Below, piece after piece: positions 3,967 through 61,689 of a stretch of 64,000 nt of DNA. Position 1 is the first letter of the stretch; each line of letters starts with the position of its first letter. A program made the translations under genes and the position numbers. The notes beneath the pieces are model-generated. The model saw only the letters and a program-made list of their open reading frames with translations, was not told the origin of the DNA and made no database searches. The stretch spans positions 62,001 to 126,000 of the IMG/VR virus record IMGVR_UViG_3300049217_000071. The stretch is one strand, 5' to 3'.

Positions 3967-4072
3967 GATTTAGTGATAGTTAGGGGAGCCCCCTGTTGAT
4001 AGTTGCGATTCGACTAAGCTATCTGAACACGAAATCCTGTTGCCATGTCGAATAGGCGCAGGTCACTAGATT
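3967..4072 (+). ncRNA. candidate structured RNA (closing stem, two hairpins, 7-bp kissing loops)
   Basis: 3968-3977 pairs with 4062-4071; loop ATTCGAC (4008-4014) complementary to loop GTCGAAT (4047-4053). Confidence 0.55.
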
Positions 4073-4706: not shown

Positions 4707-5047
4707 TGACGCAAGAAGAATTCATAGAGCTGGTCAAACAATACTCTAGGGAGACGGGGATGCTGTCTTTCCTCAAACAGGATCACCCGGCTTACCTCAA
4801 GCTGATTCAAGCTGCACCTGAGATAATTCCTTGGGCTATGGAGAGGTTGAGGGCTACCATTGGCCGTGATCAAGGAGAGAGCTACGATCATGAAAATGAT
4901 CCCTGGCTTTTGATTCGCGTCATTGACCTTCAGGCTAAGGGTAGAGCTTTAGCGAACTATCCATACGAAGATTCAGGAAAGCTAGGCAAGTTGAGAGCTT
5001 ACTGTCTCAAGTGGGGCGAATCACAAGGACTGATCAAGCTCGATTAG
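4706..5047 (+). CDS. hypothetical protein
   Basis: TAATG coupling at 4706 (MTQEEF...). Confidence 0.6.
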   Translation: MTQEEFIELVKQYSRETGMLSFLKQDHPAYLKLIQAAPEIIPWAMERLRATIGRDQGESYDHENDPWLLIRVIDLQAKGRALANYPYEDSGKLGKLRAYCLKWGESQGLIKLD

Positions 5048-6027
5048 AGCTGGGTCCAGGTCTTGGTAGATCCGTTGAAGGACCAGGTGTCGTTAGCTGG
5101 GTAGTTAGCAGTAGCATAGACCCCACCGAACATAATGGTAGTGCCGCTCTGAGGATCAAAGGTCATTTGAGCATTGATACGACCGGCTGGGCCAGCGCCA
5201 TTAGCGACAGATGCTTGAGTCCAGGTAGTACCATCAAAGGTCCAAGTTTCTACCAAGTAGTTGTATTCGTTCTTACCGCCGAACATAACCCACAGGCTGT
5301 TGACAGTGTCATAAGCCATGCAGTGTCCGCTTCTGACAGAAGGGGAGGTAGCTGTGGAAAGTTGAGTCCAAGTGCCACCTGCCACAGCGGTGAACTTCCA
5401 AGTGTCATTGAACTGACTGTTGGTTCCTTGACCACCGAATAGAACGACTGATTGAACACCACCGATAGCGCCAGATCCTGCCATAGCGGCACCGATTCTT
5501 GCGGCTGGGCCTGCACCGTTAGCGACAGTAACCTGAGTCCAAGTGCTTGCAGTTCCGTCCCAAAGCCAAGTTTCGACTAGTTGAGAAAGAGTGGTTTCTC
5601 CACTGAACATTACCACACCACCAGCGGCCCCAACAGAAGCTAGGTAGCCGTCTACGGCATTGTATCGTCCAAATGGAACAGTAGCTGGGGCAGCTTGACT
5701 CCAGGTTTGACCAGAAGTGCTCCATACCCAGGTGTCTTCTAAGACGCCGGCAGCAGCAGAGGCTCCTTGACCACCATACAACATAACATTGACCCCGTCA
5801 AATTGCATGACGAAATTGACACGACCTGGAAGAGGTCCGTTAGCATTGACTAGGGTAGCACTGGTGTTAGACCAGTCGGTACCAGTGAACTCCCAAGTTT
5901 CATTGAGGAAATTTGAGAAGGATGGATAATTGCCAGTATCCATCAAAACAACTTTCTTGCCAGAAGCCGCAGTAGGATCGGTGGCCATAGCAGAGTTTGC
6001 GCAACGAAGTGGGGTGTGAGTGGTCAT
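5044..6027 (-). CDS. Kelch-repeat beta-propeller protein
   Basis: repeated (L/M)FGG...(D/E)TW...W...P.AR units. Confidence 0.9.
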   Translation of the reverse strand: MTTHTPLRCANSAMATDPTAASGKKVVLMDTGNYPSFSNFLNETWEFTGTDWSNTSATLVNANGPLPGRVNFVMQFDGVNVMLYGGQGASAAAGVLEDTWVWSTSGQTWSQAAPATVPFGRYNAVDGYLASVGAAGGVVMFSGETTLSQLVETWLWDGTASTWTQVTVANGAGPAARIGAAMAGSGAIGGVQSVVLFGGQGTNSQFNDTWKFTAVAGGTWTQLSTATSPSVRSGHCMAYDTVNSLWVMFGGKNEYNYLVETWTFDGTTWTQASVANGAGPAGRINAQMTFDPQSGTTIMFGGVYATANYPANDTWSFNGSTKTWTQL

Positions 6028-7752: not shown

Positions 7753-7780
7753 TTGACTTGCATTTCGTAAGATATACATT
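7753..7780 (+). promoter_or_regulatory. sigma70-type promoter of tsf
   Basis: TTGACT-16nt-TACATT. Confidence 0.7.
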
Positions 7781-7799
7781 GACGGAAGAGGAAGATATT

Positions 7800-8699
7800 A
7801 TGAACAACGCTGAACTAATTAGGGAGCTTCGTGCTTTGACATCTGCTGGTATGAAAGACTGCCGTGATGCCTTGGAAGAGTCCGCCTGGGACTTGCAGAA
7901 AGCCGTCGACATTGTCAAGATCAAAGGCCTCAATATTGCTGATGGTCGCACTGGTCGTGTGGCCTCAGAAGGCAAAGTCGGCATTCTGTTCACATCCCCG
8001 ACTGAACCGGCTCACATTGTCGAGATCAATTGCCAGACTGACTTCGTAGCCAACAGCGATGGTTTCAAGAAGTTTGCTGCCATTACTCTAACTAAGTTGG
8101 GCGAGGTAGGACCTACCTTCACTGCTGCTATGGTAGAGGGTGACCGTAAAGAACTTGTCTCTACAACCAAGGAGAACATTGTGGTTCGTAGGTGGCAGAC
8201 CATTACTCCGGCCGCCTTCTCTCCTCTTACCAGAGTGTTCGGATATCAGCACTCCAATGCCAAGCTGGGCGTTTTGATGGTGCTACAAGCTTCCAATGAA
8301 GCTGTGGCCAATAGCCCCGAGCTACAGATTCTGGGCGAAGACCTGGCTATGCAAGCCTGTGCTATGAACCCTATAGCCGTCTCCCCGGAAAGCGTTCCCC
8401 AAGAAGAGAAGGATCGTCAAAAGGTTATCTTTGAAACTCAACTTCAAGAAGAGAAGAAGCCAGAGAAGATGTGGACCAAGATTTTGGAAGGTAAGTTCCG
8501 TAAGTGGAACTCCGAAGTCTGTCTGCTGGAGCAGGATTCGGTGGTTGTCGAGAAGACAGCCGTGAAGCAAGTAGTCAAGAATGTAGGAACCAAATTGGGC
8601 GGAGAGATTCAAGTGTTGAGTTTCGTTCGCTATCAAGCTGGTGAAGGAATCGAAAAGAAACAAGACAACCTCGCTGAGGAAGTCGCTAAAATGATGTAA
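7800..8699 (+). CDS. tsf: elongation factor Ts
   Basis: ELR..T.AGM.DC..AL, R.ASEG, EINCQTDFVA, AMQ..AM.P, CLLEQ. Confidence 0.95.
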   Translation: MNNAELIRELRALTSAGMKDCRDALEESAWDLQKAVDIVKIKGLNIADGRTGRVASEGKVGILFTSPTEPAHIVEINCQTDFVANSDGFKKFAAITLTKLGEVGPTFTAAMVEGDRKELVSTTKENIVVRRWQTITPAAFSPLTRVFGYQHSNAKLGVLMVLQASNEAVANSPELQILGEDLAMQACAMNPIAVSPESVPQEEKDRQKVIFETQLQEEKKPEKMWTKILEGKFRKWNSEVCLLEQDSVVVEKTAVKQVVKNVGTKLGGEIQVLSFVRYQAGEGIEKKQDNLAEEVAKMM

Positions 8700-8707
8700 G
8701 GTGTAAG

Positions 8708-9007
8708 ATGACCGATAATACGCAAGAATTGATCAACAAGTTGACGAACGCTATCTCCTTCAAGTTCAAGGAAGATGGCACCTCCCCAGGTCTAACTATC
8801 TCTCGCCTGAGAAATAGCTACTACTGTTCTGTGGTCCGCTACCCTAAGGGTTCGGCGCTCTCCACCAAGAACAAGGTCGTAGTGTGCAAGGCCGAAGCTG
8901 ATACTTTGGACTCGGCTCTCAAGACCGTGGCTAAGGAGTTTGTCAATTTGGCCAAGGTGCAACGCGATCCTCTGCAAGAGCTGAGCGATATCGTTCAGGG
9001 GGCCTAA
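8708..9007 (+). CDS. hypothetical protein
   Basis: operon packing. Confidence 0.65.
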   Translation: MTDNTQELINKLTNAISFKFKEDGTSPGLTISRLRNSYYCSVVRYPKGSALSTKNKVVVCKAEADTLDSALKTVAKEFVNLAKVQRDPLQELSDIVQGA

Positions 9008-9369
9008 TGAAGCGAGAAGAGCTATTAGCTGAGATGAAGGGGTGCATTGGCACTCAAGAACCCGTTGTCTTCTTTGAGAAGATGGTGGACGTTTTTGATA
9101 TGCTGTTTGATCGTATTGATGAGTTAGATGCCGAAGTGCATCGAGTCAAACTGCAATCGGCGTTGGCCATTCAATGGGAGCCCAAGATGGCCTCCGCCAT
9201 GTTGGCTGGCCAAATCAATTTTCTTCGTCAAGACAAAGACACTTACTTCAATGAGATTACAGAATTGAAGAAGGCTTTTGTGGAAGATTCGATCACGCAA
9301 AACTACAACGACTTCTGTGAGTTTTGGACAAGAACTCTTGGTTGGCACCCTTTCTTGGAATACAAATGA
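9007..9369 (+). CDS. hypothetical protein
   Basis: TAATG coupling. Confidence 0.65.
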   Translation: MKREELLAEMKGCIGTQEPVVFFEKMVDVFDMLFDRIDELDAEVHRVKLQSALAIQWEPKMASAMLAGQINFLRQDKDTYFNEITELKKAFVEDSITQNYNDFCEFWTRTLGWHPFLEYK

Positions 9370-9644
9370 CACCTCTCGAAGCCTTAGAACGAGCTATGTT
9401 TTTTATTTCGGGAGTCTGTTCCCAAAAGACATTGAATGTGCCAGGCGCGGTAGTGAGTCGTCTTTCTAAAGAAGCACGAGAAGCTTTGTGTGAATTAAAG
9501 TCGTCTGATGTAGACGGTAAGACTGCGCCAGTGGAACATATCCGTTATTGGATAGCCCCTCATCAGTATGAGCCTATGTATCGAAAGCCCGAGTATGTCC
9601 AAGATCGTTTGGACTTTGACAAGAAGATCCTCAAAAATGCTTGA
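9366..9644 (+). CDS. hypothetical protein
   Basis: ATGA coupling. Confidence 0.55.
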   Translation: MTPLEALERAMFFISGVCSQKTLNVPGAVVSRLSKEAREALCELKSSDVDGKTAPVEHIRYWIAPHQYEPMYRKPEYVQDRLDFDKKILKNA

Positions 9645-9864
9645 TAAGGATTTAGACGGGTTAAGTGCAGAGGAGTTAAAAATCGAGGTCAAAAAGCTTC
9701 GTGCCGGCATCAGGCAGCACCGCGATGCCACTGGTCATAATCTTTGCTGGTTTGTTCCTGAACTTTGGGACCTATTGCCAGAGAAGATTACGCCTGTTCC
9801 CCAGGTGCCATCCGAGGAGGAGTTCTTGTATAACTGTCGTCTGTATCGTCAAACCCTGAAATAA
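9637..9864 (+). CDS. hypothetical protein
   Basis: LRAGIRQHRDATGHNLCW..PELW.LLPE. Confidence 0.65.
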   Translation: MLDKDLDGLSAEELKIEVKKLRAGIRQHRDATGHNLCWFVPELWDLLPEKITPVPQVPSEEEFLYNCRLYRQTLK

Positions 9865-9899
9865 GGCTCTGGTAATACCGCGTTATATACGGTAGGTAT

Positions 9900-9974
9900 T
9901 CAGGGTTCGACTAATGGTCGGTCGCAAGCCTCCGAAGCTTTGAAATATGGGTTCGAATCCCATACCCTGAACCA
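9900..9974 (+). tRNA. tRNA-Arg (CCG)
   Basis: TCAGGGT/ACCCTGA acceptor, aagc-ctCCGaa-gctt, CCA. Confidence 0.9.
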
Positions 9975-10153
9975 TGAAAACTTTAGAACACAACCTTTAT
10001 ATTGAAGTGCAAGACACTCCTGATGGTCAAAAGATCCTGGATGAGCTAGTGGTTTGGCTCTGTGGATTGAAACACGAATATCCTAAAGCATATCTCAATG
10101 GTTGGATCGGCCCAGTCAAAGAGACTAAGAAGAAGTCCAAAAAATCAAAATGA
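9974..10153 (+). CDS. hypothetical protein (59 aa, below the ORF-track cutoff)
   Basis: MKTLEQHLY...KKSK*; stop overlaps the stub ATG at 10150. Confidence 0.6.
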   Translation: MKTLEHNLYIEVQDTPDGQKILDELVVWLCGLKHEYPKAYLNGWIGPVKETKKKSKKSK

Positions 10154-10194
10154 AATCCTTGGGCAAGCTGGTTTACTCACCACGCACCCACCTC
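10150..10194 (+). pseudogene. orphaned N-terminal stub of the 10939 gene
   Basis: MKSLGKLVYSPRTHL vs MKSIGKLVYNPRSHL at 10939. Confidence 0.9.
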
Positions 10195-10891
10195 AAGACA
10201 GATTCTGCAATGCAGAAATCTGTCCAACCTTCGCAAGAAAATTCTCTTGGGAGAGTGTTCCCTTCATTTTATTGCACGTGAAACAGCAGGATACGCAGTT
10301 GTCCAACTCATATCCTCGATCGTTATCGATTCGATCAATGCCGTTTCTAACCTCCCTGCCGACTTGTGTTTTGGTATGCGGCAGATCACCGCAATAAAAG
10401 CATCGAGCCGTGCATAGTTGTTTGAACTCATCAACAGTCATATCGAAATGAAGACTAGATTTTCTGTGCAGATCTGCCCTTCTAACGATGACCCTGGCGA
10501 CATAGGATCTGTATTCTGTGGGCCATGGGTCTTTTGAAATGGACTTTACCTTGTTATAGCAGCCACAAGATACCGTAGGAGATTTACCAGGTCCACTCTG
10601 TACTCTCAAGTTGCTAATCAATACCGTAGTGGTATTGCCACATTCACACCGGCACAATACAGTTGGGCATCCGTTTTTCCAAGTCCCTACTCTCGCTAAC
10701 ACCGTAAGCTTTCCAAACGTCTGTCCAACATACCTGTAAGGTCTTTCTGATAGGTGTGCACTCTCGATCAATCGTCTGACTGCATGTTCCGAAAGCTTCA
10801 ATCGTTTGGAAATGCTTTTTCGGCTATGACCGGCCGCCCACAGTTTGAATATCTCGTCCGTTTGAACCTGGCTAAAAACGATCCTTTTCAT
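10193..10891 (-). mobile_element. free-standing HNH endonuclease gene
   Basis: HTH, G.TFGKLTV, CRCECG, SCGC, CFYCG, NGIDRIDN..GY...NCVSCC..CN..K; GAGGTG RBS before ATG 10891. Confidence 0.9.
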
Positions 10892-10938
10892 CTTGCACCT
10901 CTCACCCATTATGCCCATATATAGCGAACAGATGCCAA

Positions 10939-11343
10939 ATGAAATCCATAGGGAAGCTAGTGTACAATCCTCGTAGTCATCTAGGATCGAGTGAAAAGTG
11001 GGCCATTTTGGCATGTGATGATGAGATTTCCAAATACTACAGGCATCTCTTCACCAAGGACTACCCGTATTTGAACGGAGAGCGAGTGGGCAAGCTGACC
11101 CGTCCGGTGTGGGGAACTCACATTTCTATCATTCGAGGGGAATATATTCCGAACTTCAAGCTATGGGGTCTGGACGCCAACAAGGTGATCGAGTTCACTT
11201 ACGAAGGTGGCGTTATAGACAACGGTGAATACTACTGGTTGAAAGTCAACTGTCCTTATATTGGAGATTTGCGCGAGAAGTATGGGTTGAAGAGGGAGCC
11301 GAAATTTGGTTTCCATTTGACTATCGGGAGAACCACAGAATGA
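10939..11343 (+). CDS. putative 2H phosphoesterase
   Basis: two Hx[ST] motifs: THISII and FHLTIG. Confidence 0.65.
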   Translation: MKSIGKLVYNPRSHLGSSEKWAILACDDEISKYYRHLFTKDYPYLNGERVGKLTRPVWGTHISIIRGEYIPNFKLWGLDANKVIEFTYEGGVIDNGEYYWLKVNCPYIGDLREKYGLKREPKFGFHLTIGRTTE

Positions 11344-11443
11344 ATAAGAACGAAATCAAGAAGATGGAAATCAAGAACGCAGAAATTGTCGCTTTGGTTC
11401 TTCTATTCGGCATCCTGATTTGGCTGATTTTCAGGAGATAATT

Positions 11444-11770
11444 ATGAGCCAAGTAACATCTACCTTCTATATGATGTGTTGGGGTTGCAATAGAACTTTG
11501 CCACGTCCCTATCTTGGTGAAGAAGATTATGCTCGTCAAATGCAAGAGCTAATGACAATGGGTTGGCAGCGAAGGGTTTTTGGACCAGGCGCTGATCCTT
11601 GGTTCTGTAGTGATGACTGCGCCCACAACTCAGCCAATGCCAAACGAGCGGAAGCTTGGTGGGCCAATAAAAAGAACAAAGAAGAAGTCTCCCTTTACCT
11701 AACCATTGCGGGAAGCGGAATGCTTCTCCTCGTTGGTTTGGCAGCTTTACTGGTGGCGGTGTTTCGATGA
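11444..11770 (+). CDS. Zn-finger protein with C-terminal TM helix
   Basis: CWGC...FCSDDC; hydrophobic C-terminus. Confidence 0.6.
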   Translation: MSQVTSTFYMMCWGCNRTLPRPYLGEEDYARQMQELMTMGWQRRVFGPGADPWFCSDDCAHNSANAKRAEAWWANKKNKEEVSLYLTIAGSGMLLLVGLAALLVAVFR

Positions 11771-12432
11771 TTCATCACAATGAGTTCTATCTCAGCCTAA
11801 TTAGGCACGGTCAGTCGGCCGTCAATATCCAACCGGATATGATGGGCCAAGCACCAGATACTCCCTTGACTGATAAGGGTATTTCTCAAGCAGCACTGCT
11901 GGGACAGCGTCTCAAGGGAGAGGATAAGAAGTTCGACTACGTCTTTACCTCTGACTATATTAGGGCCTACAACACCGCTAAGATTGCGATGGGAGAAGAT
12001 TATCCAATGATAGTCAGCTCCGCTCTCCGAGAATATAGTGCAGGCGATTGGGATGGGGCCTCCCGTAAAGAGATTCAGACAGAACGTCTGAAGCTAAGAA
12101 TGGCCGCTATGACCAATGCCTTCTGTCCGCCTAATGGCGAATCATTGCATATGGTGGAGCGCCGAGCCTCCCAATGGTTGGAGGATACCGTCCTCTACAA
12201 CGAAGGATTTATCAACGAAACGGCCGCTCGTCATGAGCTTGGCCTCAAGCCGATGGAGATAGCAGTTTTCTCCCACGGTATGACTATCAAGTGTCTACTA
12301 CATTACATTATGGGGTTTGATCAGAGCTTTACTTGGAAGCTCACCCTGGAAAACACATCTATCTCAAAACTACATTTTGGAATGGAAGGATGGCGATTGC
12401 TTACGATCAATGATCACGCACATTTACTATGA
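11767..12432 (+). CDS. histidine phosphatase family protein
   Basis: LIRHGQS, LRE..AG.W, P..GES, FSHG, N.SIS, ND.AHL. Confidence 0.93.
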   Translation: MIHHNEFYLSLIRHGQSAVNIQPDMMGQAPDTPLTDKGISQAALLGQRLKGEDKKFDYVFTSDYIRAYNTAKIAMGEDYPMIVSSALREYSAGDWDGASRKEIQTERLKLRMAAMTNAFCPPNGESLHMVERRASQWLEDTVLYNEGFINETAARHELGLKPMEIAVFSHGMTIKCLLHYIMGFDQSFTWKLTLENTSISKLHFGMEGWRLLTINDHAHLL

Positions 12433-12962
12433 ATGAGGTCTCCATGGGAGTCCAAGAACGAAAACGACAAAAACGAATACGAGACTATGTTATTGACCGA
12501 GATGGAATGTTGTGCTGCTACTGCGACAAGGTGTTAGAGCCAGAGACTGTCACGATGGAACATATTGTTCCAGACAGTCGAAGAGGAACTTTCAATACGA
12601 CGAACCTGACCGTCTCCTGTGCAGAATGCAACAACAGACGAGGCAACAAGCCCTTCTTTGATTACTGTAAGAAGTTCAACTTCCCGGAAGATAAACTGAA
12701 TAAGTATAAGCAACTATACTTCAACAACTTACGAATCAAGGTATTGAATATCTCCAAAGAGGAATGTCTCAAAGATGATGAGGATATTCCGGCTGCGCTT
12801 ATCAAACGAGCTTGTCAGATTCTCAAGATCAAAAGCATGGACTTTGATGATTACGAGAAGGCTTATCCCTTTGAGATAAAATTCAGTGAGCCTTGCGACC
12901 GCAGAAAGATCAAGTTTTGTTTCGAGCAATTGATCAGGATTATCGAAGAAGACAGCAAGTGA
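12429..12962 (+). CDS. HNH nuclease
   Basis: RDG..CCYC, TMEHIVP.S..G, NL..SC..CN..RG. Confidence 0.9.
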   Translation: MNEVSMGVQERKRQKRIRDYVIDRDGMLCCYCDKVLEPETVTMEHIVPDSRRGTFNTTNLTVSCAECNNRRGNKPFFDYCKKFNFPEDKLNKYKQLYFNNLRIKVLNISKEECLKDDEDIPAALIKRACQILKIKSMDFDDYEKAYPFEIKFSEPCDRRKIKFCFEQLIRIIEEDSK

Positions 12963-12991: not shown

Positions 12992-13282
12992 ATGCTAAAG
13001 CCACTCAGAGATTTCATCGTTGTATCGGTTGCCAAGAAGACGGAAGAGAAGACCCCCAGCGGATTACTGCATCTTCCCGGCAACATTGAAGAGAAGGTCG
13101 TCACTGGCCAAGTTGTTGCTGTAGGTTCCGGCTACTTGACAGACAGCGGAACCGTGGTTCCCTTGGAAGTCAAAGCCGGCGACAGTATCTTGTTCAACAA
13201 GCAGATGTCGGTAGAAGTCAAGCACGCAGGGGAAACAATGTTCCTTCTTCGTGAAGAGCACATTCTCAGCGTCATCAGCTAA
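12992..13282 (+). CDS. groES: co-chaperonin GroES
   Basis: LKPL.D, T.SGL.LP, G.VVAVG.G, PL.VK.GD, LRE..IL. Confidence 0.95.
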   Translation: MLKPLRDFIVVSVAKKTEEKTPSGLLHLPGNIEEKVVTGQVVAVGSGYLTDSGTVVPLEVKAGDSILFNKQMSVEVKHAGETMFLLREEHILSVIS

Positions 13283-19830: not shown

Positions 19831-19835
19831 GATCT

Positions 19836-20036
19836 ATGAAATTGTCGCTTGACGGCACTGACATCCTAACTGGTAAGCCAGCTGATACTCAAGTTTCCAA
19901 GGATATGTGGGTAGTCGATGGAATGAAATCCATTTCTCTCAAGGCTTGGCCTGAAGATAACAATGGTGGGGCCGCCTTCATCTTTACCAGCGCTAACAAT
20001 AGCGTAGCTGTTCATACTCACGGCGATTTGTCTTAA
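19836..20036 (+). pseudogene. probable fragment of a longer phage gene
   Basis: ends abruptly at the start of the HNH remnant. Confidence 0.4.
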
Positions 20037-20208
20037 CGGAATTGATAGAGTTGACAACGAGACGGGTTATATATTGGATAACTGTATTACGTGTTGTAAG
20101 ATATGCAATTACGCCAAATCTACGATGCCTTACGAAGATTTCATTACGTGGATCGATAATCTTGTCAAATATCGAGTATCACTAAATAATACGGAGAATG
20201 TCCTATGA
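20035..20208 (+). pseudogene. HNH endonuclease C-terminal remnant
   Basis: no start; NGIDRVDNETGYILDNCITCCKICNYAK, same family as the 10193 and 24278 HNHs; stop overlaps NAMPT ATG. Confidence 0.88.
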
Positions 20209-21602
20209 ATGAGAATTACCTGTTTGATACTGACAGCTATAAAGCAAGCCATTATCTTCAGTATCCCGAAAAAACCACGAGTATGTTTTCTTACGTCGAA
20301 AGCAGGGGCGGAGATTACAATGCAACCGTTTTCTTTGGGCTACAATACTTCCTCAAGGCTTATCTTACTTATCGCGTTACGCCCAAGGATGTGGAAGAAG
20401 CTAAAGAGTTCTATACTGCTCATGGCGTGCCATTCAATTATGATGGTTGGATGTATGTTGCTAAAGACCTAAAAGGTAGGTTGCCTGTCAGGATTAGGGC
20501 AGTGCCAGAGGGAACTATCGTTCCAACCCACAATATCTTGGTAAGCATCGAATCGACCGATCCTAAGGCCTTTTGGGTTGTTTCCTGGTTGGAGACAATG
20601 TTGCTACGATACGTGTGGTATGGAACTACCGTAGCCACCAGAAGTCGTAGAATTAGGCAGACAATCTTGGAAGCTTTGCGAAAGACTGCCGATGCTCCTG
20701 ATACAGAAATCAGCTTCAAACTTCATGACTTTGGTTCTCGTGGGGTGAGCAGCCAGGAAAGTGCTATGCTTGGAGGCGCAGCTCATCTCATCAATTTTAT
20801 GGGCAGCGATACCATCGCGGGCATCAGATGCGCTAACAAATACTACGACTGCCCGATGGCAGGTTTTAGTATTCCTGCTGCGGAACACTCTTCTATCACT
20901 TCGTGGGGTAAAGAACACGAGGTAGATGCGTATGCCAACATGCTAACACAGTTTGCCAAACCAGGAGCTTTGGTAGTTGTGGTAAGCGATAGCTATGATT
21001 TGTGGAATGCCTGTGAGCATCTCTGGGGCGAACAGCTCAAGCAGAAAGTTATAGATTCCGGTGCGACGGTTGTAATTCGTCCTGATAGTGGCCATCCTCC
21101 GGCCGTAGTGCTCAAGACCCTACAGATATTGGATAGTAAGTTTGGACACACAATCAATACTAAGGGGTATAAAGTCTTGAACAATGTTAGGGTTATCCAA
21201 GGTGATGGCATCAATGAGCACTCGATAAGAGACATTCTGAATGAGTTTATGTGGGATAAATACAGTGCCACCAATGTTGCCTTTGGTATGGGTGGTCAGC
21301 TATTGCAAGGTCTCAACCGAGACACTCTCAAGTTTGCTATGAAGTGTTCTTCCATTACTGTCAATGGTGAAGTGCGAGATGTCTTCAAGGATCCGATCAC
21401 CGATCACGGTAAAGTAAGCAAGGCAGGACGCTTGGATCTGGTCAAACGAGATGGTCATTTTGAGACGATTGAGATTAGCCGAGGAGACCAGGCTTCTCAC
21501 GACAACTTCAGTGAGATGCAAACTGTCTATGAGAACGGTCAGATTTTGATTGACGATACGTTCGAGAATATCCGTGCTCGTGCTAAAGGAGAAATGGTAT
21601 AA
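20205..21602 (+). CDS. nadV: nicotinamide phosphoribosyltransferase (NAMPT)
   Basis: TDSYKASH, HDFGSRG, SIPAAEHS, VSDSYD, IRPDSG, IQGDG, FGMGG.LLQ, RDT..FA.K. Confidence 0.95.
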   Translation: MNENYLFDTDSYKASHYLQYPEKTTSMFSYVESRGGDYNATVFFGLQYFLKAYLTYRVTPKDVEEAKEFYTAHGVPFNYDGWMYVAKDLKGRLPVRIRAVPEGTIVPTHNILVSIESTDPKAFWVVSWLETMLLRYVWYGTTVATRSRRIRQTILEALRKTADAPDTEISFKLHDFGSRGVSSQESAMLGGAAHLINFMGSDTIAGIRCANKYYDCPMAGFSIPAAEHSSITSWGKEHEVDAYANMLTQFAKPGALVVVVSDSYDLWNACEHLWGEQLKQKVIDSGATVVIRPDSGHPPAVVLKTLQILDSKFGHTINTKGYKVLNNVRVIQGDGINEHSIRDILNEFMWDKYSATNVAFGMGGQLLQGLNRDTLKFAMKCSSITVNGEVRDVFKDPITDHGKVSKAGRLDLVKRDGHFETIEISRGDQASHDNFSEMQTVYENGQILIDDTFENIRARAKGEMV

Positions 21603-24277: not shown

Positions 24278-24853
24278 ATGAAAAACGCTGATTATGTGGG
24301 CATCGAGATCAATGGGCTGAAAATTGTAGGATATCGATGCACCAAAGGTGCCAGTCGCCGAACATATTTTACCTGCATTTGTCTTTGTGGTAAAGAGTTT
24401 GAGTCGCGTGCTGAAGCTATTAAAAATGGTATGGCCAGAAGCTGTGGGTGTAAGACTTCTGAATTGATGTCTGCGGCCCATACTTTAGATGGTGATTTTG
24501 CCGCCATAAATATAGTCTATAGACGTTACAAATACACGGCAAAAAGAAAAAGCATACCGTTTTTACTATCATCAGATCAATTCAAGCAATTTATTTTTCA
24601 GGATTGCAGTTATTGTGGAGCTAAACCAAAATTGTCTATTATGAAAATTGGTGGTAATGCAGGCCGAAAAACTGTCAAACAACTGACATATAACGGAATT
24701 GATCGTGTAGATAATAACATTGGCTATACAGTTAGTAATTGTATTACGTGTTGCTCATTTTGTAATGGTGCCAAGTCTGATTTTTCGTTGGAAGAATTTC
24801 GGATTTGGATCAAACAACTCGTCTCATTTATGAATGGTAGGAATAATGCCTGA
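24278..24853 (+). mobile_element. free-standing HNH endonuclease gene
   Basis: CICLCG, SCGC, CSYCG, NGIDRVDN..GY...NCITCC..CN.AK. Confidence 0.9.
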
Positions 24854-39880: not shown

Positions 39881-40140
39881 TGAAAACAGATGACGCTCTC
39901 TATAAAGAGATACAAAAAGATATAGCTAATGGTGTAGCGGTAGTTCTTCGAGAAACTATCACATTCGATGGTATAATCAAACAGCAATATATCGTAAGAA
40001 TGTTTTTAGATGGAATCAATATTATGCTTTGGAAATACTCAGACATCACATCTAGGTGGGAATCCAAGTCAATGAGTTGGCTACAGTTGGACGCGCAAGA
40101 AATAAAGACGCTACAAACATTTCTACTCAAGTTCAACTAA
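39880..40140 (+). CDS. hypothetical protein
   Basis: TAATG coupling to PARP. Confidence 0.55.
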   Translation: MKTDDALYKEIQKDIANGVAVVLRETITFDGIIKQQYIVRMFLDGINIMLWKYSDITSRWESKSMSWLQLDAQEIKTLQTFLLKFN

Positions 40141-40806
40141 GTGGGGCCAAGTAATTCCTCTAATAGCTCGTGAGATAGCTGATTCACTAACATTTAACAT
40201 TTTGCTCAGTTGAACGAATGTCATCCCTTCTCGATGTAATTTTCGTGCTTGAAGAACGATTTCGTCGGTAAGTTTGGCAAAGCTATTGGCACTACCTAAG
40301 ATTTTTTTACCATAGAATGGATTATCGGCCCCAAAGAACTTTCTATTTGGATTTTGGCTCATTAGCTGTTTAGATTGTTGGCTGTGTTGTTTTCCGAAGA
40401 AACTGTTTCCGGCACCCTGTCTTTGTTCTGACATTGATTGTTTGGTTTCTTCTGAATGATGTTTTCCGAGCATACTTGGTGTTCGAGGTTTTATCACTAC
40501 CGTTTTGGTAGCTAACTGTCCGCCTCCCGTTAGGTTATAGCCAAACTCTTTTTTGTTAGACCGGAAAAATTGAACCCAAAATTGTTCAGCCTCATCTATT
40601 GTTTCTTTTGTGTGTTGCTCAATTTCTATAAACTCAAAATTATCTAAACCATATTTTCTGATGCTTCGATATATTGGCTTGTTGTTGAGCTTCGTGAAAG
40701 CTTCGTATTTATGGCGGCCCTGGCGCCTTTTCATATTGTTAGTTTGCCCTACATAAAGTTTTGAGTTTGTTTTGTTGCGGATAATATAGATAGAATACAT
40801 AGTCAT
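40123..40806 (-). mobile_element. GIY-YIG endonuclease gene (NUMOD3-like repeats)
   Basis: SIY.I.N..N.KLYVGQT, GYNLT.GG, GKHHSEETK, FFGKQHS. Confidence 0.92.
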
Positions 40807-60933: not shown

Positions 60934-61115
60934 TTTTTGAGGTGGGAGCCAGACTATGGATTTGTGATACCTGTGGTATAGAAGTATTATTACAAGTACG
61001 CAATTACTCTGCTGGCCCTCCAGAAGGCTGGACTATGAGAAGAGAGCGGCTTCATTGGTACTCTCTTCCAATCATCAAATGCTATTGTTCTGAATGCTCC
61101 AGCGTTTCCCATTAA
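60930..61115 (+). CDS. small Zn-finger protein
   Basis: CDTCG...PEGW...CSEC. Confidence 0.6.
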   Translation: MIFEVGARLWICDTCGIEVLLQVRNYSAGPPEGWTMRRERLHWYSLPIIKCYCSECSSVSH

Positions 61116-61689
61116 CAATGCGTGAAATTTGTGCGGCAGACAGGCTGAATATTCTACAAAGTTCAGCCTGTTTATATTTGCCTGTGGCAAACAGGTCGCA
61201 TATTTCTTTTACCTGCTCTTTGGTAATTTTTGCTCTTACTTTAAGTAAAGCTTCTTTTACATGAGACTTCATACTATTTCCATAGTTGCCATTAGCCTTA
61301 CCAAACAGTTGAACGCCATGCATTGGATTACCTTCGCCTGAATTCAATCTGCTCATACGCCGTTTACGCTCTTCAGTCCATTTAGTACCAGTCACCCCAT
61401 CGCCACCATCCGTTTCATTGTATACTTGATAAGAGTTTTCTTTTAGAAATTTGATCCATTCAGCTTCTCTATCATTAGCTTGCTCTTTGGTTTCTAATTC
61501 CTCAATTACTTTGAAGGCAAACTTATCGGCACCATATTTGTTTATGGCGCAATGAACCGCGTATCTCTTTTTAGATTTGGCATCTGATTTATGGCGCTTC
61601 CAACGCTCCCTGGGATTATTGGTAATTCCTACGTAAAGCTTGCCATTAATTGTATTGAATATCAGATATAAATAAAACATTACCTTCAT
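61075..61689 (-). mobile_element. GIY-YIG endonuclease gene
   Basis: YLY.I.N.INGKLYVGIT, YNETDGG, C-terminal HTH. Confidence 0.92.

What the first reader, a model, noticed from the sequence alone, without database searches (positions are those of the whole stretch)
10150..10983. Antisense HNH inserted at codon 15 with a recoded N-terminus
MKSLGKLVYSPRTHL (10150) vs MKSIGKLVYNPRSHL (10939): 12 of 15 identical, most codons changed. The HNH stop codon (10193-10195, minus strand) sits exactly at the end of similarity. With the endonuclease antisense and almost no non-coding sequence, there is no room for a self-splicing intron core, which favours replacement over splicing.
Basis: seen in the sequence. 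Interest (0 to 1): 0.82.

Follow-up and report, generated by a model that had tools for sequence, protein, structure and literature searches.

The report
Homing endonuclease insertion leaving gene stub
A selfish nuclease gene has jumped into the start of a conserved huge-phage gene and brought a foreign copy of that gene's first 16 codons, so the gene stays intact and the original 15-codon start is left as a dead stub. This kind of event is known, but here the footprint is unusually clear.

Summary

- **Stub.** Window 10150-10194 holds the first 15 codons of a conserved 134-aa 2H-phosphoesterase-like gene. They are still joined by an ATGA overlap to the upstream gene.
- **Insert.** Next come an intact antisense endonuclease gene (10193-10891; PacI-like HNH domain with an N-terminal HTH), a 47-nt spacer, and a complete copy of the 2H gene (10939-11343).
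- **Origin of the stub.** It matches the closest relative (L030) at 42 of 45 nt. The working copy's first 15 codons match at only 31 of 45. Codons 27-134 of the working copy are 85% nt / 96% aa identical to L030.
- **Origin of the working N-terminus.** It carries the S13/G16 haplotype found next to all four related HNH genes. It switches to the other haplotype by residue 18, right where the stub ends.
- **Relatives.** The four closest HNH homologues sit antisense directly upstream of the same gene. One (L028) keeps a 5-codon stub. One (L029) differs from an HNH-free sister (L009) almost only in nt 18-99.

The best explanation is one-sided, endonuclease-driven homing with co-conversion. Nuclease activity and the cut site are inferred, not shown. 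It is a new variant of a known kind: the 5'-end, antisense, phage counterpart of fungal mitochondrial endonuclease "gene hybrids".

The parts
9974..10153 (+). Upstream 59-aa gene ('up59', no family hit). Its stop overlaps the stub's ATG in an ATGA overlap. This is the resident left flank.
   Evidence: ORF list. Homologues lie directly upstream of the 2H gene in L013 (ATGA overlap, no HNH) and L029. A tRNA-Arg(CCG) at 9900-9974 abuts it.
10150..10194 (+). Stub: the resident 2H gene's first 15 codons (T13 haplotype). The frame then runs on through antisense HNH sequence to a stop at 10279-10281 (43-aa ORF).
   Evidence: 42/45 nt and 15/15 aa identical to the start of the closest relative's gene (L030 / P0003).
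10193..10891 (-). Intact 232-aa free-standing homing-endonuclease-like gene: N-terminal GerE/LuxR-type HTH, a Cys-rich middle part, and a C-terminal PacI-like HNH domain.
   Evidence: PHROGs. Invariant CxxC...GIDRID..GY..N..CC..CN..K motif. PacI profile hit E 1.4e-5. AF2 model and Foldseek: PacI top hit, GerE-type HTH hits for the N-terminus. Absent from 23 IMG/VR relatives. The four closest homologues are at the same site.
10892..10938 (.). 47-nt spacer that belongs to the incoming cassette. It carries the HNH ribosome-binding site on the minus strand. No clear Shine-Dalgarno precedes the 2H ATG.
   Evidence: The block CTCTCACC(A/C)AT is shared with the spacers of L026 and L029. The promoter scan is uninformative.
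10939..10986 (+). Imported 5' end of the working 2H gene: ATG plus codons 2-16, with the S13/G16 haplotype.
   Evidence: Only 31/45 nt identical to both L030 and the stub. S13 and G16 match every HNH-linked allele. S-G-S is a unique recombinant haplotype among 118 homologues.
10987..11343 (+). Resident body of the 2H-phosphoesterase-like gene (codons 17-134 plus stop). Both HxS/T motifs (H61-x-S63, H126-x-T128) are intact.
   Evidence: Codons 27-134 are 85% nt / 96% aa identical to L030, and codons 16-26 are 85% nt identical to L031. In the body tree the window groups with L030 and L031, support 99/99. PF22547 hit 23.8 bits (below the cut-off of 27) and phrog_12204 E 4e-25.

Best explanation
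Shown by comparison: the resident gene order was up59, then the 2H gene, joined by an ATGA overlap. A mobile cassette now sits after codon 15 of the 2H gene. The cassette is an antisense HNH endonuclease gene, its 47-nt leader, and the first about 16 codons of a foreign 2H allele. The working gene is therefore a chimera of foreign codons 1-16 and resident codons 17-134, read from the ATG at 10939. The resident codons 1-15 remain as a stub. Inferred: in a mixed infection the endonuclease from a donor phage cut the resident T-type allele at about codon 15/16. The right-hand end was repaired by homologous copying from the donor, with the crossover within about 2-6 codons of the break. That copying ran through the donor's 2H start, the spacer and the HNH gene. 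The imported, largely synonymous 5' patch probably also makes the new allele uncuttable.
For: (1) The stub is resident-like and the working N-terminus is not: 3 versus 14 differences from L030 in 45 nt (p = 0.006). Window versus L030 has 31/78 differences in nt 1-78 against 48/324 afterwards (p = 4e-6). (2) Residues 13/16/18 form two linked haplotypes in the family, T-[A/S]-S and S-G-N. The window alone is S-G-S, which places the crossover next to the stub's end. (3) The HNH is mobile and site-specific. It is absent from the 23 IMG/VR relatives. The four closest homologues (47-54% aa) are all antisense and immediately upstream of the 2H gene in syntenic loci. HNH is present beside 4/11 distinct S-G alleles and 0/18 T alleles (p = 0.014, relatedness ignored). 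(4) There is a second, independent case. L029 (HNH+) and L009 (HNH-free) differ at 24/99 nt in nt 1-99 but at 7/306 nt afterwards (p = 1e-10); of the changed codons, 13 are synonymous and 4 are not. (5) The left junctions vary among HNH+ loci: 45-nt stub in the window, 15-nt stub in L028, 5 nt or less in L026 and L029, none in L027. The right side is always spacer plus 2H. (6) The 5' haplotype is uncoupled from the gene-body tree: 9 changes on 29 tips, at least 3 of them forced by well-supported branches. (7) The nuclease ORF is intact with all family-invariant residues. (8) One-sided homing with illegitimate junctions has been shown experimentally in T4 (Parker et al. 1999, as summarised in PMC2988022).
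Against: No nuclease activity, cut site or immunity has been measured. The donor is not sampled: the nearest HNH is only 54% identical, and nothing matches the spacer plus 16 codons closely. The S-G-N haplotype is also common in HNH-free genomes (7 of 11 distinct alleles), so it may be an ordinary polymorphism. S18 could be a single-base reversion, and codons 16-26 match L031 rather than L030, so the crossover is placed by parsimony only. L030, the best 'empty' comparator, is a 905-bp contig that carries a different HNH gene directly upstream. No ribosome-binding site is evident before the ATG at 10939, and IMG's own gene call starts at codon 8.
Confidence: 0.8

Rival explanations
1. The first 15 codons were duplicated in place (a target-site or slippage duplication made when the HNH inserted), and the two copies then diverged.
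For: The two copies are direct repeats that flank the insert exactly.
Against: The unconstrained copy (the stub) is the one that stayed close to the nearest relative: 42/45 nt against 31/45 for the working copy. The working copy's differences reproduce the S13/G16 haplotype of other HNH-linked alleles. 45 nt is far longer than typical target-site duplications (background knowledge).
Confidence: 0.04
2. The gene is split. The stub and the body are joined by RNA splicing, protein splicing or ribosomal bypass, and the downstream 15 codons are not used.
For: The stub keeps its start codon and its coupling to the upstream gene. No Shine-Dalgarno precedes 10939.
Against: No Rfam family other than the tRNA is found in 9000-12500 at E <= 1. 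The intervening 744 nt are an antisense ORF plus 47 nt. The stub frame runs into a stop at 10279-10281. The downstream copy is a complete in-frame N-terminus that matches the family consensus. HNH+ relatives with little or no stub still have the full gene.
Confidence: 0.02
3. Ordinary illegitimate recombination in a hypervariable region made the structure. The HNH gene is a passenger, or is domesticated or inactive, and does not target this site.
For: The region upstream of the 2H gene varies greatly among relatives and holds several unrelated genes. The HNH homologues are old (47-57% identical), not a recent sweep. S-G-N alleles often lack the HNH.
Against: Five out of five members of this HNH clade sit in the same orientation at the same gene boundary, in genomes whose 2H bodies are not each other's closest relatives. 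Divergence is sharply localised next to the HNH in the sister pair L009/L029. Catalytic and zinc-binding residues are invariant.
Confidence: 0.12

Closest known systems
Mobile endonuclease ORF (mORF) 'gene hybrids' of fungal mitochondria: Allomyces macrogynus atp6; Glomus sp. atp6, atp9, cox2 and nad3 (PMC3630166). Related partial C-terminal duplications of cob and atp6 beside free-standing HEGs are reported in PMC6279837.
   Same: An endonuclease ORF travels with a foreign copy of the host gene's terminus, which replaces the native one. The native terminus is left beside the insert as a remnant. The remnant resembles the close relative (91% nt in Glomus atp6; 93% here), while the two copies are far apart (63.5% there; 69% here) with mostly synonymous changes.
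   Different: Here the 5' end (N-terminus) is replaced, not the 3' end. The endonuclease is antisense and not fused in frame. It is a PacI-like HNH rather than a LAGLIDADG or GIY-YIG enzyme. The host is a huge bacteriophage, not a mitochondrion.
Intronless homing of free-standing HEGs in T4-like phages (Seg and Mob enzymes) with co-conversion of flanking markers, plus experimentally produced 'one-sided' homing with illegitimate double-strand-break repair (review PMC2988022; mobE in PMC2790892).
   Same: A free-standing HNH gene lies between or at the edge of conserved genes. Its presence is sporadic at a fixed site. There is a tract of donor sequence next to it. A junction with no homology on one side matches the one-sided events described for T4.
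   Different: T4 free-standing enzymes usually cut hundreds of bases or more from their own gene and leave no duplicated gene fragment. Here the inferred cut is inside the neighbouring gene, about 800 bp from the far end of the insert, and a duplicated 15-codon stub remains. The nuclease domain is PacI-like, not the HNH_3 type of the Mob enzymes.
The MobA plus gene 60 bypass cassette of phage T4 (listed; mechanism recalled from background knowledge of Bonocora et al. 2011).
   Same: The idea that a homing endonuclease moves together with an adjacent sequence change in the target gene that keeps the gene working and protects it from re-cutting.
   Different: There is no untranslated coding gap or ribosome hop here. 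Protection, if any, comes from substituted codons.
HEGs at boundaries of genetic exchange between phages (ICP1 study, PMC10448857).
   Same: A nuclease gene sits exactly where sequence ancestry changes between related phages.
   Different: That work does not describe a retained stub with a duplicated, replaced gene start.

Membership tests
Free-standing homing endonuclease gene (intronless homing) | Encodes a nuclease domain of a recognised HEG family | tested here: met
   PHROG HNH / endonuclease VII families, E 7e-17 to 2e-14. Profile hit to the HNH enzyme PacI, E 1.4e-5. Foldseek top hit PacI, prob 0.98. Invariant Cys/Asp-Arg/Asn motif. Pfam's HNH models themselves do not hit at E < 0.01.
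Free-standing homing endonuclease gene (intronless homing) | Separate DNA-binding module | tested here: met
   N-terminal HTH: weak Pfam HTH_23 / GerE hits, E about 3e-3. GerE/LuxR-type folds with prob 0.98-0.99 in Foldseek.
Free-standing homing endonuclease gene (intronless homing) | Sporadic presence or absence at one fixed site among otherwise syntenic genomes | tested here: met
   Absent from 23 IMG/VR relatives and 6 further loci. Present at the same boundary in L026-L029.
Free-standing homing endonuclease gene (intronless homing) | Co-conversion tract of donor sequence next to the element | tested here: met
   Chimeric 2H gene in the window. L009 versus L029: 24/99 against 7/306 differences.
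Free-standing homing endonuclease gene (intronless homing) | Site-specific cleavage of the element-free allele, resistance of the element-bearing allele, and over-inheritance in crosses | not testable with these tools
   Needs protein expression, in vitro cleavage assays and mixed infections.
Intron- or intein-borne endonuclease (self-splicing element) | Ribozyme core (group I or II), or an in-frame intein, flanking the endonuclease ORF | tested here: not met
   No Rfam family other than the tRNA in 9000-12500 at E <= 1. The ORF is antisense and only 47 nt are non-coding.
Fungal-mitochondrial-type mORF gene hybrid | Endonuclease ORF plus a foreign replacement of the host gene's terminus, with the native terminus left as a remnant that matches close relatives better | tested here: met
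   compared with PMC3630166.
Fungal-mitochondrial-type mORF gene hybrid | Replacement of the C-terminus, with the endonuclease ORF in the sense orientation downstream of or fused to the gene; LAGLIDADG or GIY-YIG enzyme | tested here: not met
   Here it is the N-terminus, the ORF is antisense, and the enzyme is a PacI-like HNH.
Transposon-type target-site duplication | Short, initially identical direct repeats made from the target | tested here: not met
   The repeats are 45 nt long, share only 31/45 nt, and have different ancestry.
2H phosphoesterase superfamily (the interrupted host gene) | Two HxT/S motifs on a 2H fold | tested here: inconclusive
   H61-x-S63 and H126-x-T128 are invariant. 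PF22547 scores 23.8 bits, below the cut-off of 27, although the family is precomputed for many homologues. No PDB sequence hit. The fold was not modelled.

The most novel reading that the evidence does not exclude
This HNH family moves as a self-contained 'cut, insert and replace' cassette: the nuclease gene plus a cleavage-immune replacement of the target gene's first about 16 codons. Such a cassette could land inside a conserved coding sequence using homology on one side only, with no intron or intein. That would be a phage 5'-end counterpart of the fungal mitochondrial mORF strategy. The stub's end and the unique S-G-S recombinant haplotype would then mark the cleavage site to within a few codons.
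Probability: 0.3. Interest if true: 0.6.

Novelty: new variant of a known kind. Interest (0 to 1): 0.45.

Why it matters
This is a clean natural footprint of one-sided homing, a route by which free-standing endonuclease genes can reach sites that lack full flanking homology. Until now that route is known mainly from engineered T4 crosses.

The stub, the chimeric gene and the haplotype switch together predict where the enzyme cuts (about nt 45-65 of T-type alleles) and which substitutions confer immunity. An uncharacterised PacI-like homing endonuclease thus becomes directly testable.

The finding also shows that the 5' end of a conserved huge-phage gene is exchanged independently of the gene body, which matters for phylogenies and gene calling. 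The public gene call for this locus starts the 2H protein seven residues too late.

Tried and rejected
- **Megablast of 9500-12500 against GenBank phages:** no match. Only distant protein-level relatives in jumbo phages such as Bacillus phage G gp116.
- **Exact or degenerate DNA pattern of the stub in JGI metagenome contigs:** 0 hits.
- **up59 in IMG/VR:** only the window's own contig.
- **HNH in IMG/VR:** nothing above 36% identity over most of the protein's length apart from the window's own contig; the only higher values are short segments of about 36-70 residues.
- **NCBIfam:** no meaningful hit for the HNH or the 2H protein.
- **PDB sequence search with a 2H profile:** nothing significant.
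- **Promoter and terminator scan:** counts no higher than in shuffled sequence.
- **Similar duplicated gene ends beside the window's other HNH copies (24278-24853 and the remnant near 20035-20190):** none found.
- **Donor for the spacer plus the 16 imported codons:** none among 80 fetched loci.
- **Splicing, bypass, in-place duplication and chance similarity:** considered and rejected for the reasons given under the rival explanations.

Full report
**What is in the sequence.**
The window comes from a huge phage. Its own contig is a 268-kb IMG/VR record (L001), and the window holds 17 tRNA genes. Around the finding, almost everything is coded on the plus strand. The order is as follows.
- tRNA-Arg(CCG), 9900-9974.
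- A 59-aa gene ('up59'), 9974-10153.
- A 15-codon start, MKSLGKLVYSPRTHL, at 10150-10194. Its ATG overlaps the up59 stop in an ATGA overlap.
- A minus-strand ORF whose stop codon (10193-10195) overlaps stub codon 15 by 2 nt.
- A 47-nt spacer, 10892-10938.
- A complete 134-aa gene, 10939-11343, that starts MKSIGKLVYNPRSHL.

The two 15-codon stretches share 12/15 residues and 31/45 nt. Ten codons differ, 7 of them synonymously.

**What the genes are.**
The 134-aa protein belongs to a family conserved in jumbo and huge phages.
- It matches phrog_12204 at E 4e-25 and gives a sub-threshold Pfam 2H-SAK hit (23.8 bits against a cut-off of 27).
- It is 41% identical to Bacillus phage G gp116.
- It has 372 homologues in the large protein collection.
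- Two invariant HxS/T motifs fit a 2H phosphoesterase, but I did not model the fold.

The minus-strand ORF most likely starts at the ATG at 10891. Homologues begin in the same alignment column, and GAGAGG lies 6 nt upstream. Evidence on its identity:
- It matches PHROG HNH / endonuclease VII families at E 7e-17 to 2e-14.
- A family profile matches the HNH restriction enzyme PacI (3LDY) at E 1.4e-5 across the invariant CxxC...GIDRID..GY..N..CC..CN..K block.
- An AlphaFold model (pLDDT 90.5) has PacI as its best PDB match. GerE/LuxR-type HTH domains match the N-terminal 50 residues.

This is the architecture of a free-standing homing endonuclease.

**The stub is the resident start; the working start is imported.**
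The closest relative of the 134-aa protein is P0003 (90% identical, on the 905-bp contig L030).
- P0003's first 15 residues are identical to the stub.
- At the DNA level the stub matches L030 at 42/45 nt, and at 94.6% over 56 nt when the 12 nt upstream are included.
- The working copy's first 45 nt match L030 at only 31/45 (Fisher p = 0.006).
- From codon 27 onwards the working gene is 85% nt / 96% aa identical to L030. In nt 1-78 it is only 60% identical (p = 4e-6).
- A maximum-likelihood tree of codons 19-134 groups the window with L030 and L031, with support 99/99.

The working gene is therefore a chimera, and the stub is what the chimera's missing resident start looked like. In-place duplication followed by divergence would predict the opposite pattern: the unconstrained stub would drift while the working copy stayed close to relatives.

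**Where the switch lies.**
Across 118 homologues, residues 13/16/18 fall into two tightly linked haplotypes. About 75 proteins are T-[A/S]-S and about 33 are S-G-N.
- The stub is T-type.
- The working copy is S-G-S, a combination seen in no other sequence.
- Its codons 16-26 resemble T-type L031 at 85% nt.

The most parsimonious reading is that foreign sequence runs from the HNH gene through codon 16 and resident sequence resumes by codon 18, or by codon 22 at the latest. That is immediately beside the point where the stub ends. S18 could be a one-base reversion, so this placement is an inference.

**The endonuclease is mobile and tied to this site.**
- None of the 23 IMG/VR relatives has this HNH within 4 kb of the 2H gene. 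The six further loci fetched later also lack it.
- The only close homologues in 5.8 billion proteins are P0121-P0124, at 47-54% identity.
- All four lie antisense and immediately upstream of the 2H gene in syntenic loci (EF-Ts ... 2H ... His_Phos_1 ... HNH_5 ... Cpn10).
- All four neighbouring 2H genes are S-G-N.
- The HNH is present beside 4/11 distinct S-G alleles and 0/18 T alleles (p = 0.014, ignoring relatedness).
- On the gene-body tree the 5' haplotype is no more clustered than shuffled labels. It needs 9 changes on 29 tips, at least 3 of them forced by well-supported branches. The 5' end is therefore exchanged independently of the rest of the gene.

**An independent replicate.**
L029 (HNH+, S-G-N) and L009 (no HNH, T-A-S) have nearly identical 2H bodies, with 7 differences in nt 100-405. 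They differ at 24 of the first 99 nt, concentrated in nt 18-69 (p = 1e-10). Of the changed codons, 13 are synonymous and 4 are not. This is the signature of a co-conversion tract, an immunity patch, or both, next to a homing endonuclease gene.

**Left junctions vary; the right side does not.**
With the 2H gene on the plus strand, the right side of every HNH+ locus is the HNH start, a spacer that shares the CTCTCACC(A/C)AT block, and the 2H ATG. The left side differs from locus to locus.
- L027: the HNH ends in the intergenic gap, with no stub.
- L026 and L029: at most about 5 nt of a possible 2H start remain.
- L028: a clear 5-codon stub (MKSIG, 15 nt) follows the upstream gene's ATGA overlap. 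It is read antisense as the HNH protein's extended C-terminal tail.
- Window: 45 nt remain.

L013 (no HNH) shows the presumed ancestral up59-ATGA-2H arrangement.

**Mechanism.**
The parts above are shown by comparison. What follows is inferred.

The pattern fits endonuclease-driven double-strand-break repair with homology on one side only.
- The break lies in a T-type 2H allele at about codon 15/16.
- The right end invades the donor's 2H gene with minimal resection. Synthesis then copies the donor's 2H start, the spacer and the HNH gene.
- The left end, which lacks matching homology beyond the HNH, is joined illegitimately.

Such one-sided homing, with microhomology junctions and variable degradation, has been shown in T4 (Parker et al. 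1999, summarised in PMC2988022). The different stub lengths would reflect different amounts of left-end resection or later deletion.

Two consequences follow. The working gene has lost its translational coupling to up59 and has no obvious Shine-Dalgarno; only 25 of 60 long ORFs in the window have one. Plus-strand transcription also reads antisense through the HNH gene.

**What it is not.**
- No intron: no Rfam family other than the tRNA is found at E <= 1.
- No intein or in-frame fusion: the ORF is antisense.
- No bypass: the downstream gene has its own complete, consensus N-terminus.
- Not a transposon-style target duplication: the repeats are 69% identical and have different ancestry.

**Comparison with what is known.**
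The closest described architecture is the endonuclease 'mORF gene hybrid' of fungal mitochondria (Allomyces atp6; Glomus atp6, atp9, cox2 and nad3). There an inserted foreign C-terminus and an endonuclease ORF displace the native C-terminus, which persists as a remnant. The identity figures are strikingly similar: 91% remnant-to-relative and 63.5% between the copies (PMC3630166), against 93% and 69% here.

The present case is its mirror image. It affects the 5' end, the ORF is antisense, the enzyme is a PacI-like HNH, and the host is a huge phage. Mechanistically it belongs with intronless homing of T4-type free-standing endonucleases (PMC2988022, PMC2790892) and with the observation that nuclease genes mark boundaries of exchange between phages (PMC10448857). 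I found no phage report of a retained stub with a replaced gene start, but the literature search was limited to the held library.

**Limits.**
- Nuclease activity, cut site and immunity are untested.
- The donor is unsampled.
- L030 is short and carries another HNH gene upstream.
- S-G-N alleles are common without the HNH.
- The haplotype statistics ignore shared ancestry.

**Verdict.**
This is a new variant of a known kind, of moderate interest.

Noticed in passing
L013:2667-3563; L016:2588-3172; L022:3094-4002; L030:1-183; L031:1363-2376: The slot just upstream of the 2H gene is a hot spot for other homing-endonuclease-like genes. L013 has a GIY-YIG + NUMOD3 gene. L016, L022, L030 and L031 have sense-strand HNH / HNH_3 genes; three of them (L022, L030, L031) abut or overlap the 2H start codon.
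   Followed up: partly
L028 (reverse orientation), about 4016-4030 in 2H-plus coordinates: A second HNH+ locus keeps a 5-codon 2H stub (MKSIG) after the upstream gene's ATGA overlap. The HNH ORF reads through it antisense, which gives the protein an extended tail, QLISYKCF.
   Followed up: yes
window 12429-12962 (+): A 177-aa HNH_5 / HNH protein is conserved at 50-80% identity at the same syntenic position in most related loci fetched (no hit in L017, L018 and L020). It behaves like a fixed core gene rather than a mobile endonuclease.
   Followed up: partly
window 24278-24853 (+): A 191-aa paralogue of the PacI-like HNH domain without the HTH. It is on the sense strand and overlaps by 20 nt the start of a 506-aa gene at 24834. 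No duplicated gene end was found beside it.
   Followed up: partly
window about 19835-20190 (+): A frameshifted remnant of a third PacI-like HNH gene (the GIDRVDN...CC..CN part is intact, the upstream part is in another frame). It lies between a 433-aa gene and the 465-aa gene at 20205.
   Followed up: partly
window 40123-40806 (-) and 61075-61689 (-): Two more antisense free-standing endonuclease genes (GIY-YIG, one with NUMOD3) lie in an otherwise plus-strand region. Small plus-strand ORFs overlap their 3' ends. They were not examined for stubs in detail.
   Followed up: partly
window 10939-10959: The public gene call for this contig (P0001 / P0002, 127 aa) starts the 2H protein at the GTG of codon 8. 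It omits seven residues that match the family consensus. The cause is probably the extended minus-strand ORF that runs to 11014.
   Followed up: yes
window 5043-6027 (-): A 327-aa Kelch-repeat beta-propeller protein is encoded on the minus strand between tRNA clusters.
   Followed up: no
window 7758-8699, 12992-13282, 20205-21602: Translation and metabolism genes typical of huge phages. An EF-Ts-like gene and a Cpn10-like gene are read from the Pfam hits on their syntenic counterparts in related loci. The 465-aa gene at 20205 looks like a nicotinamide phosphoribosyltransferase from its sequence only and was not searched.
   Followed up: no
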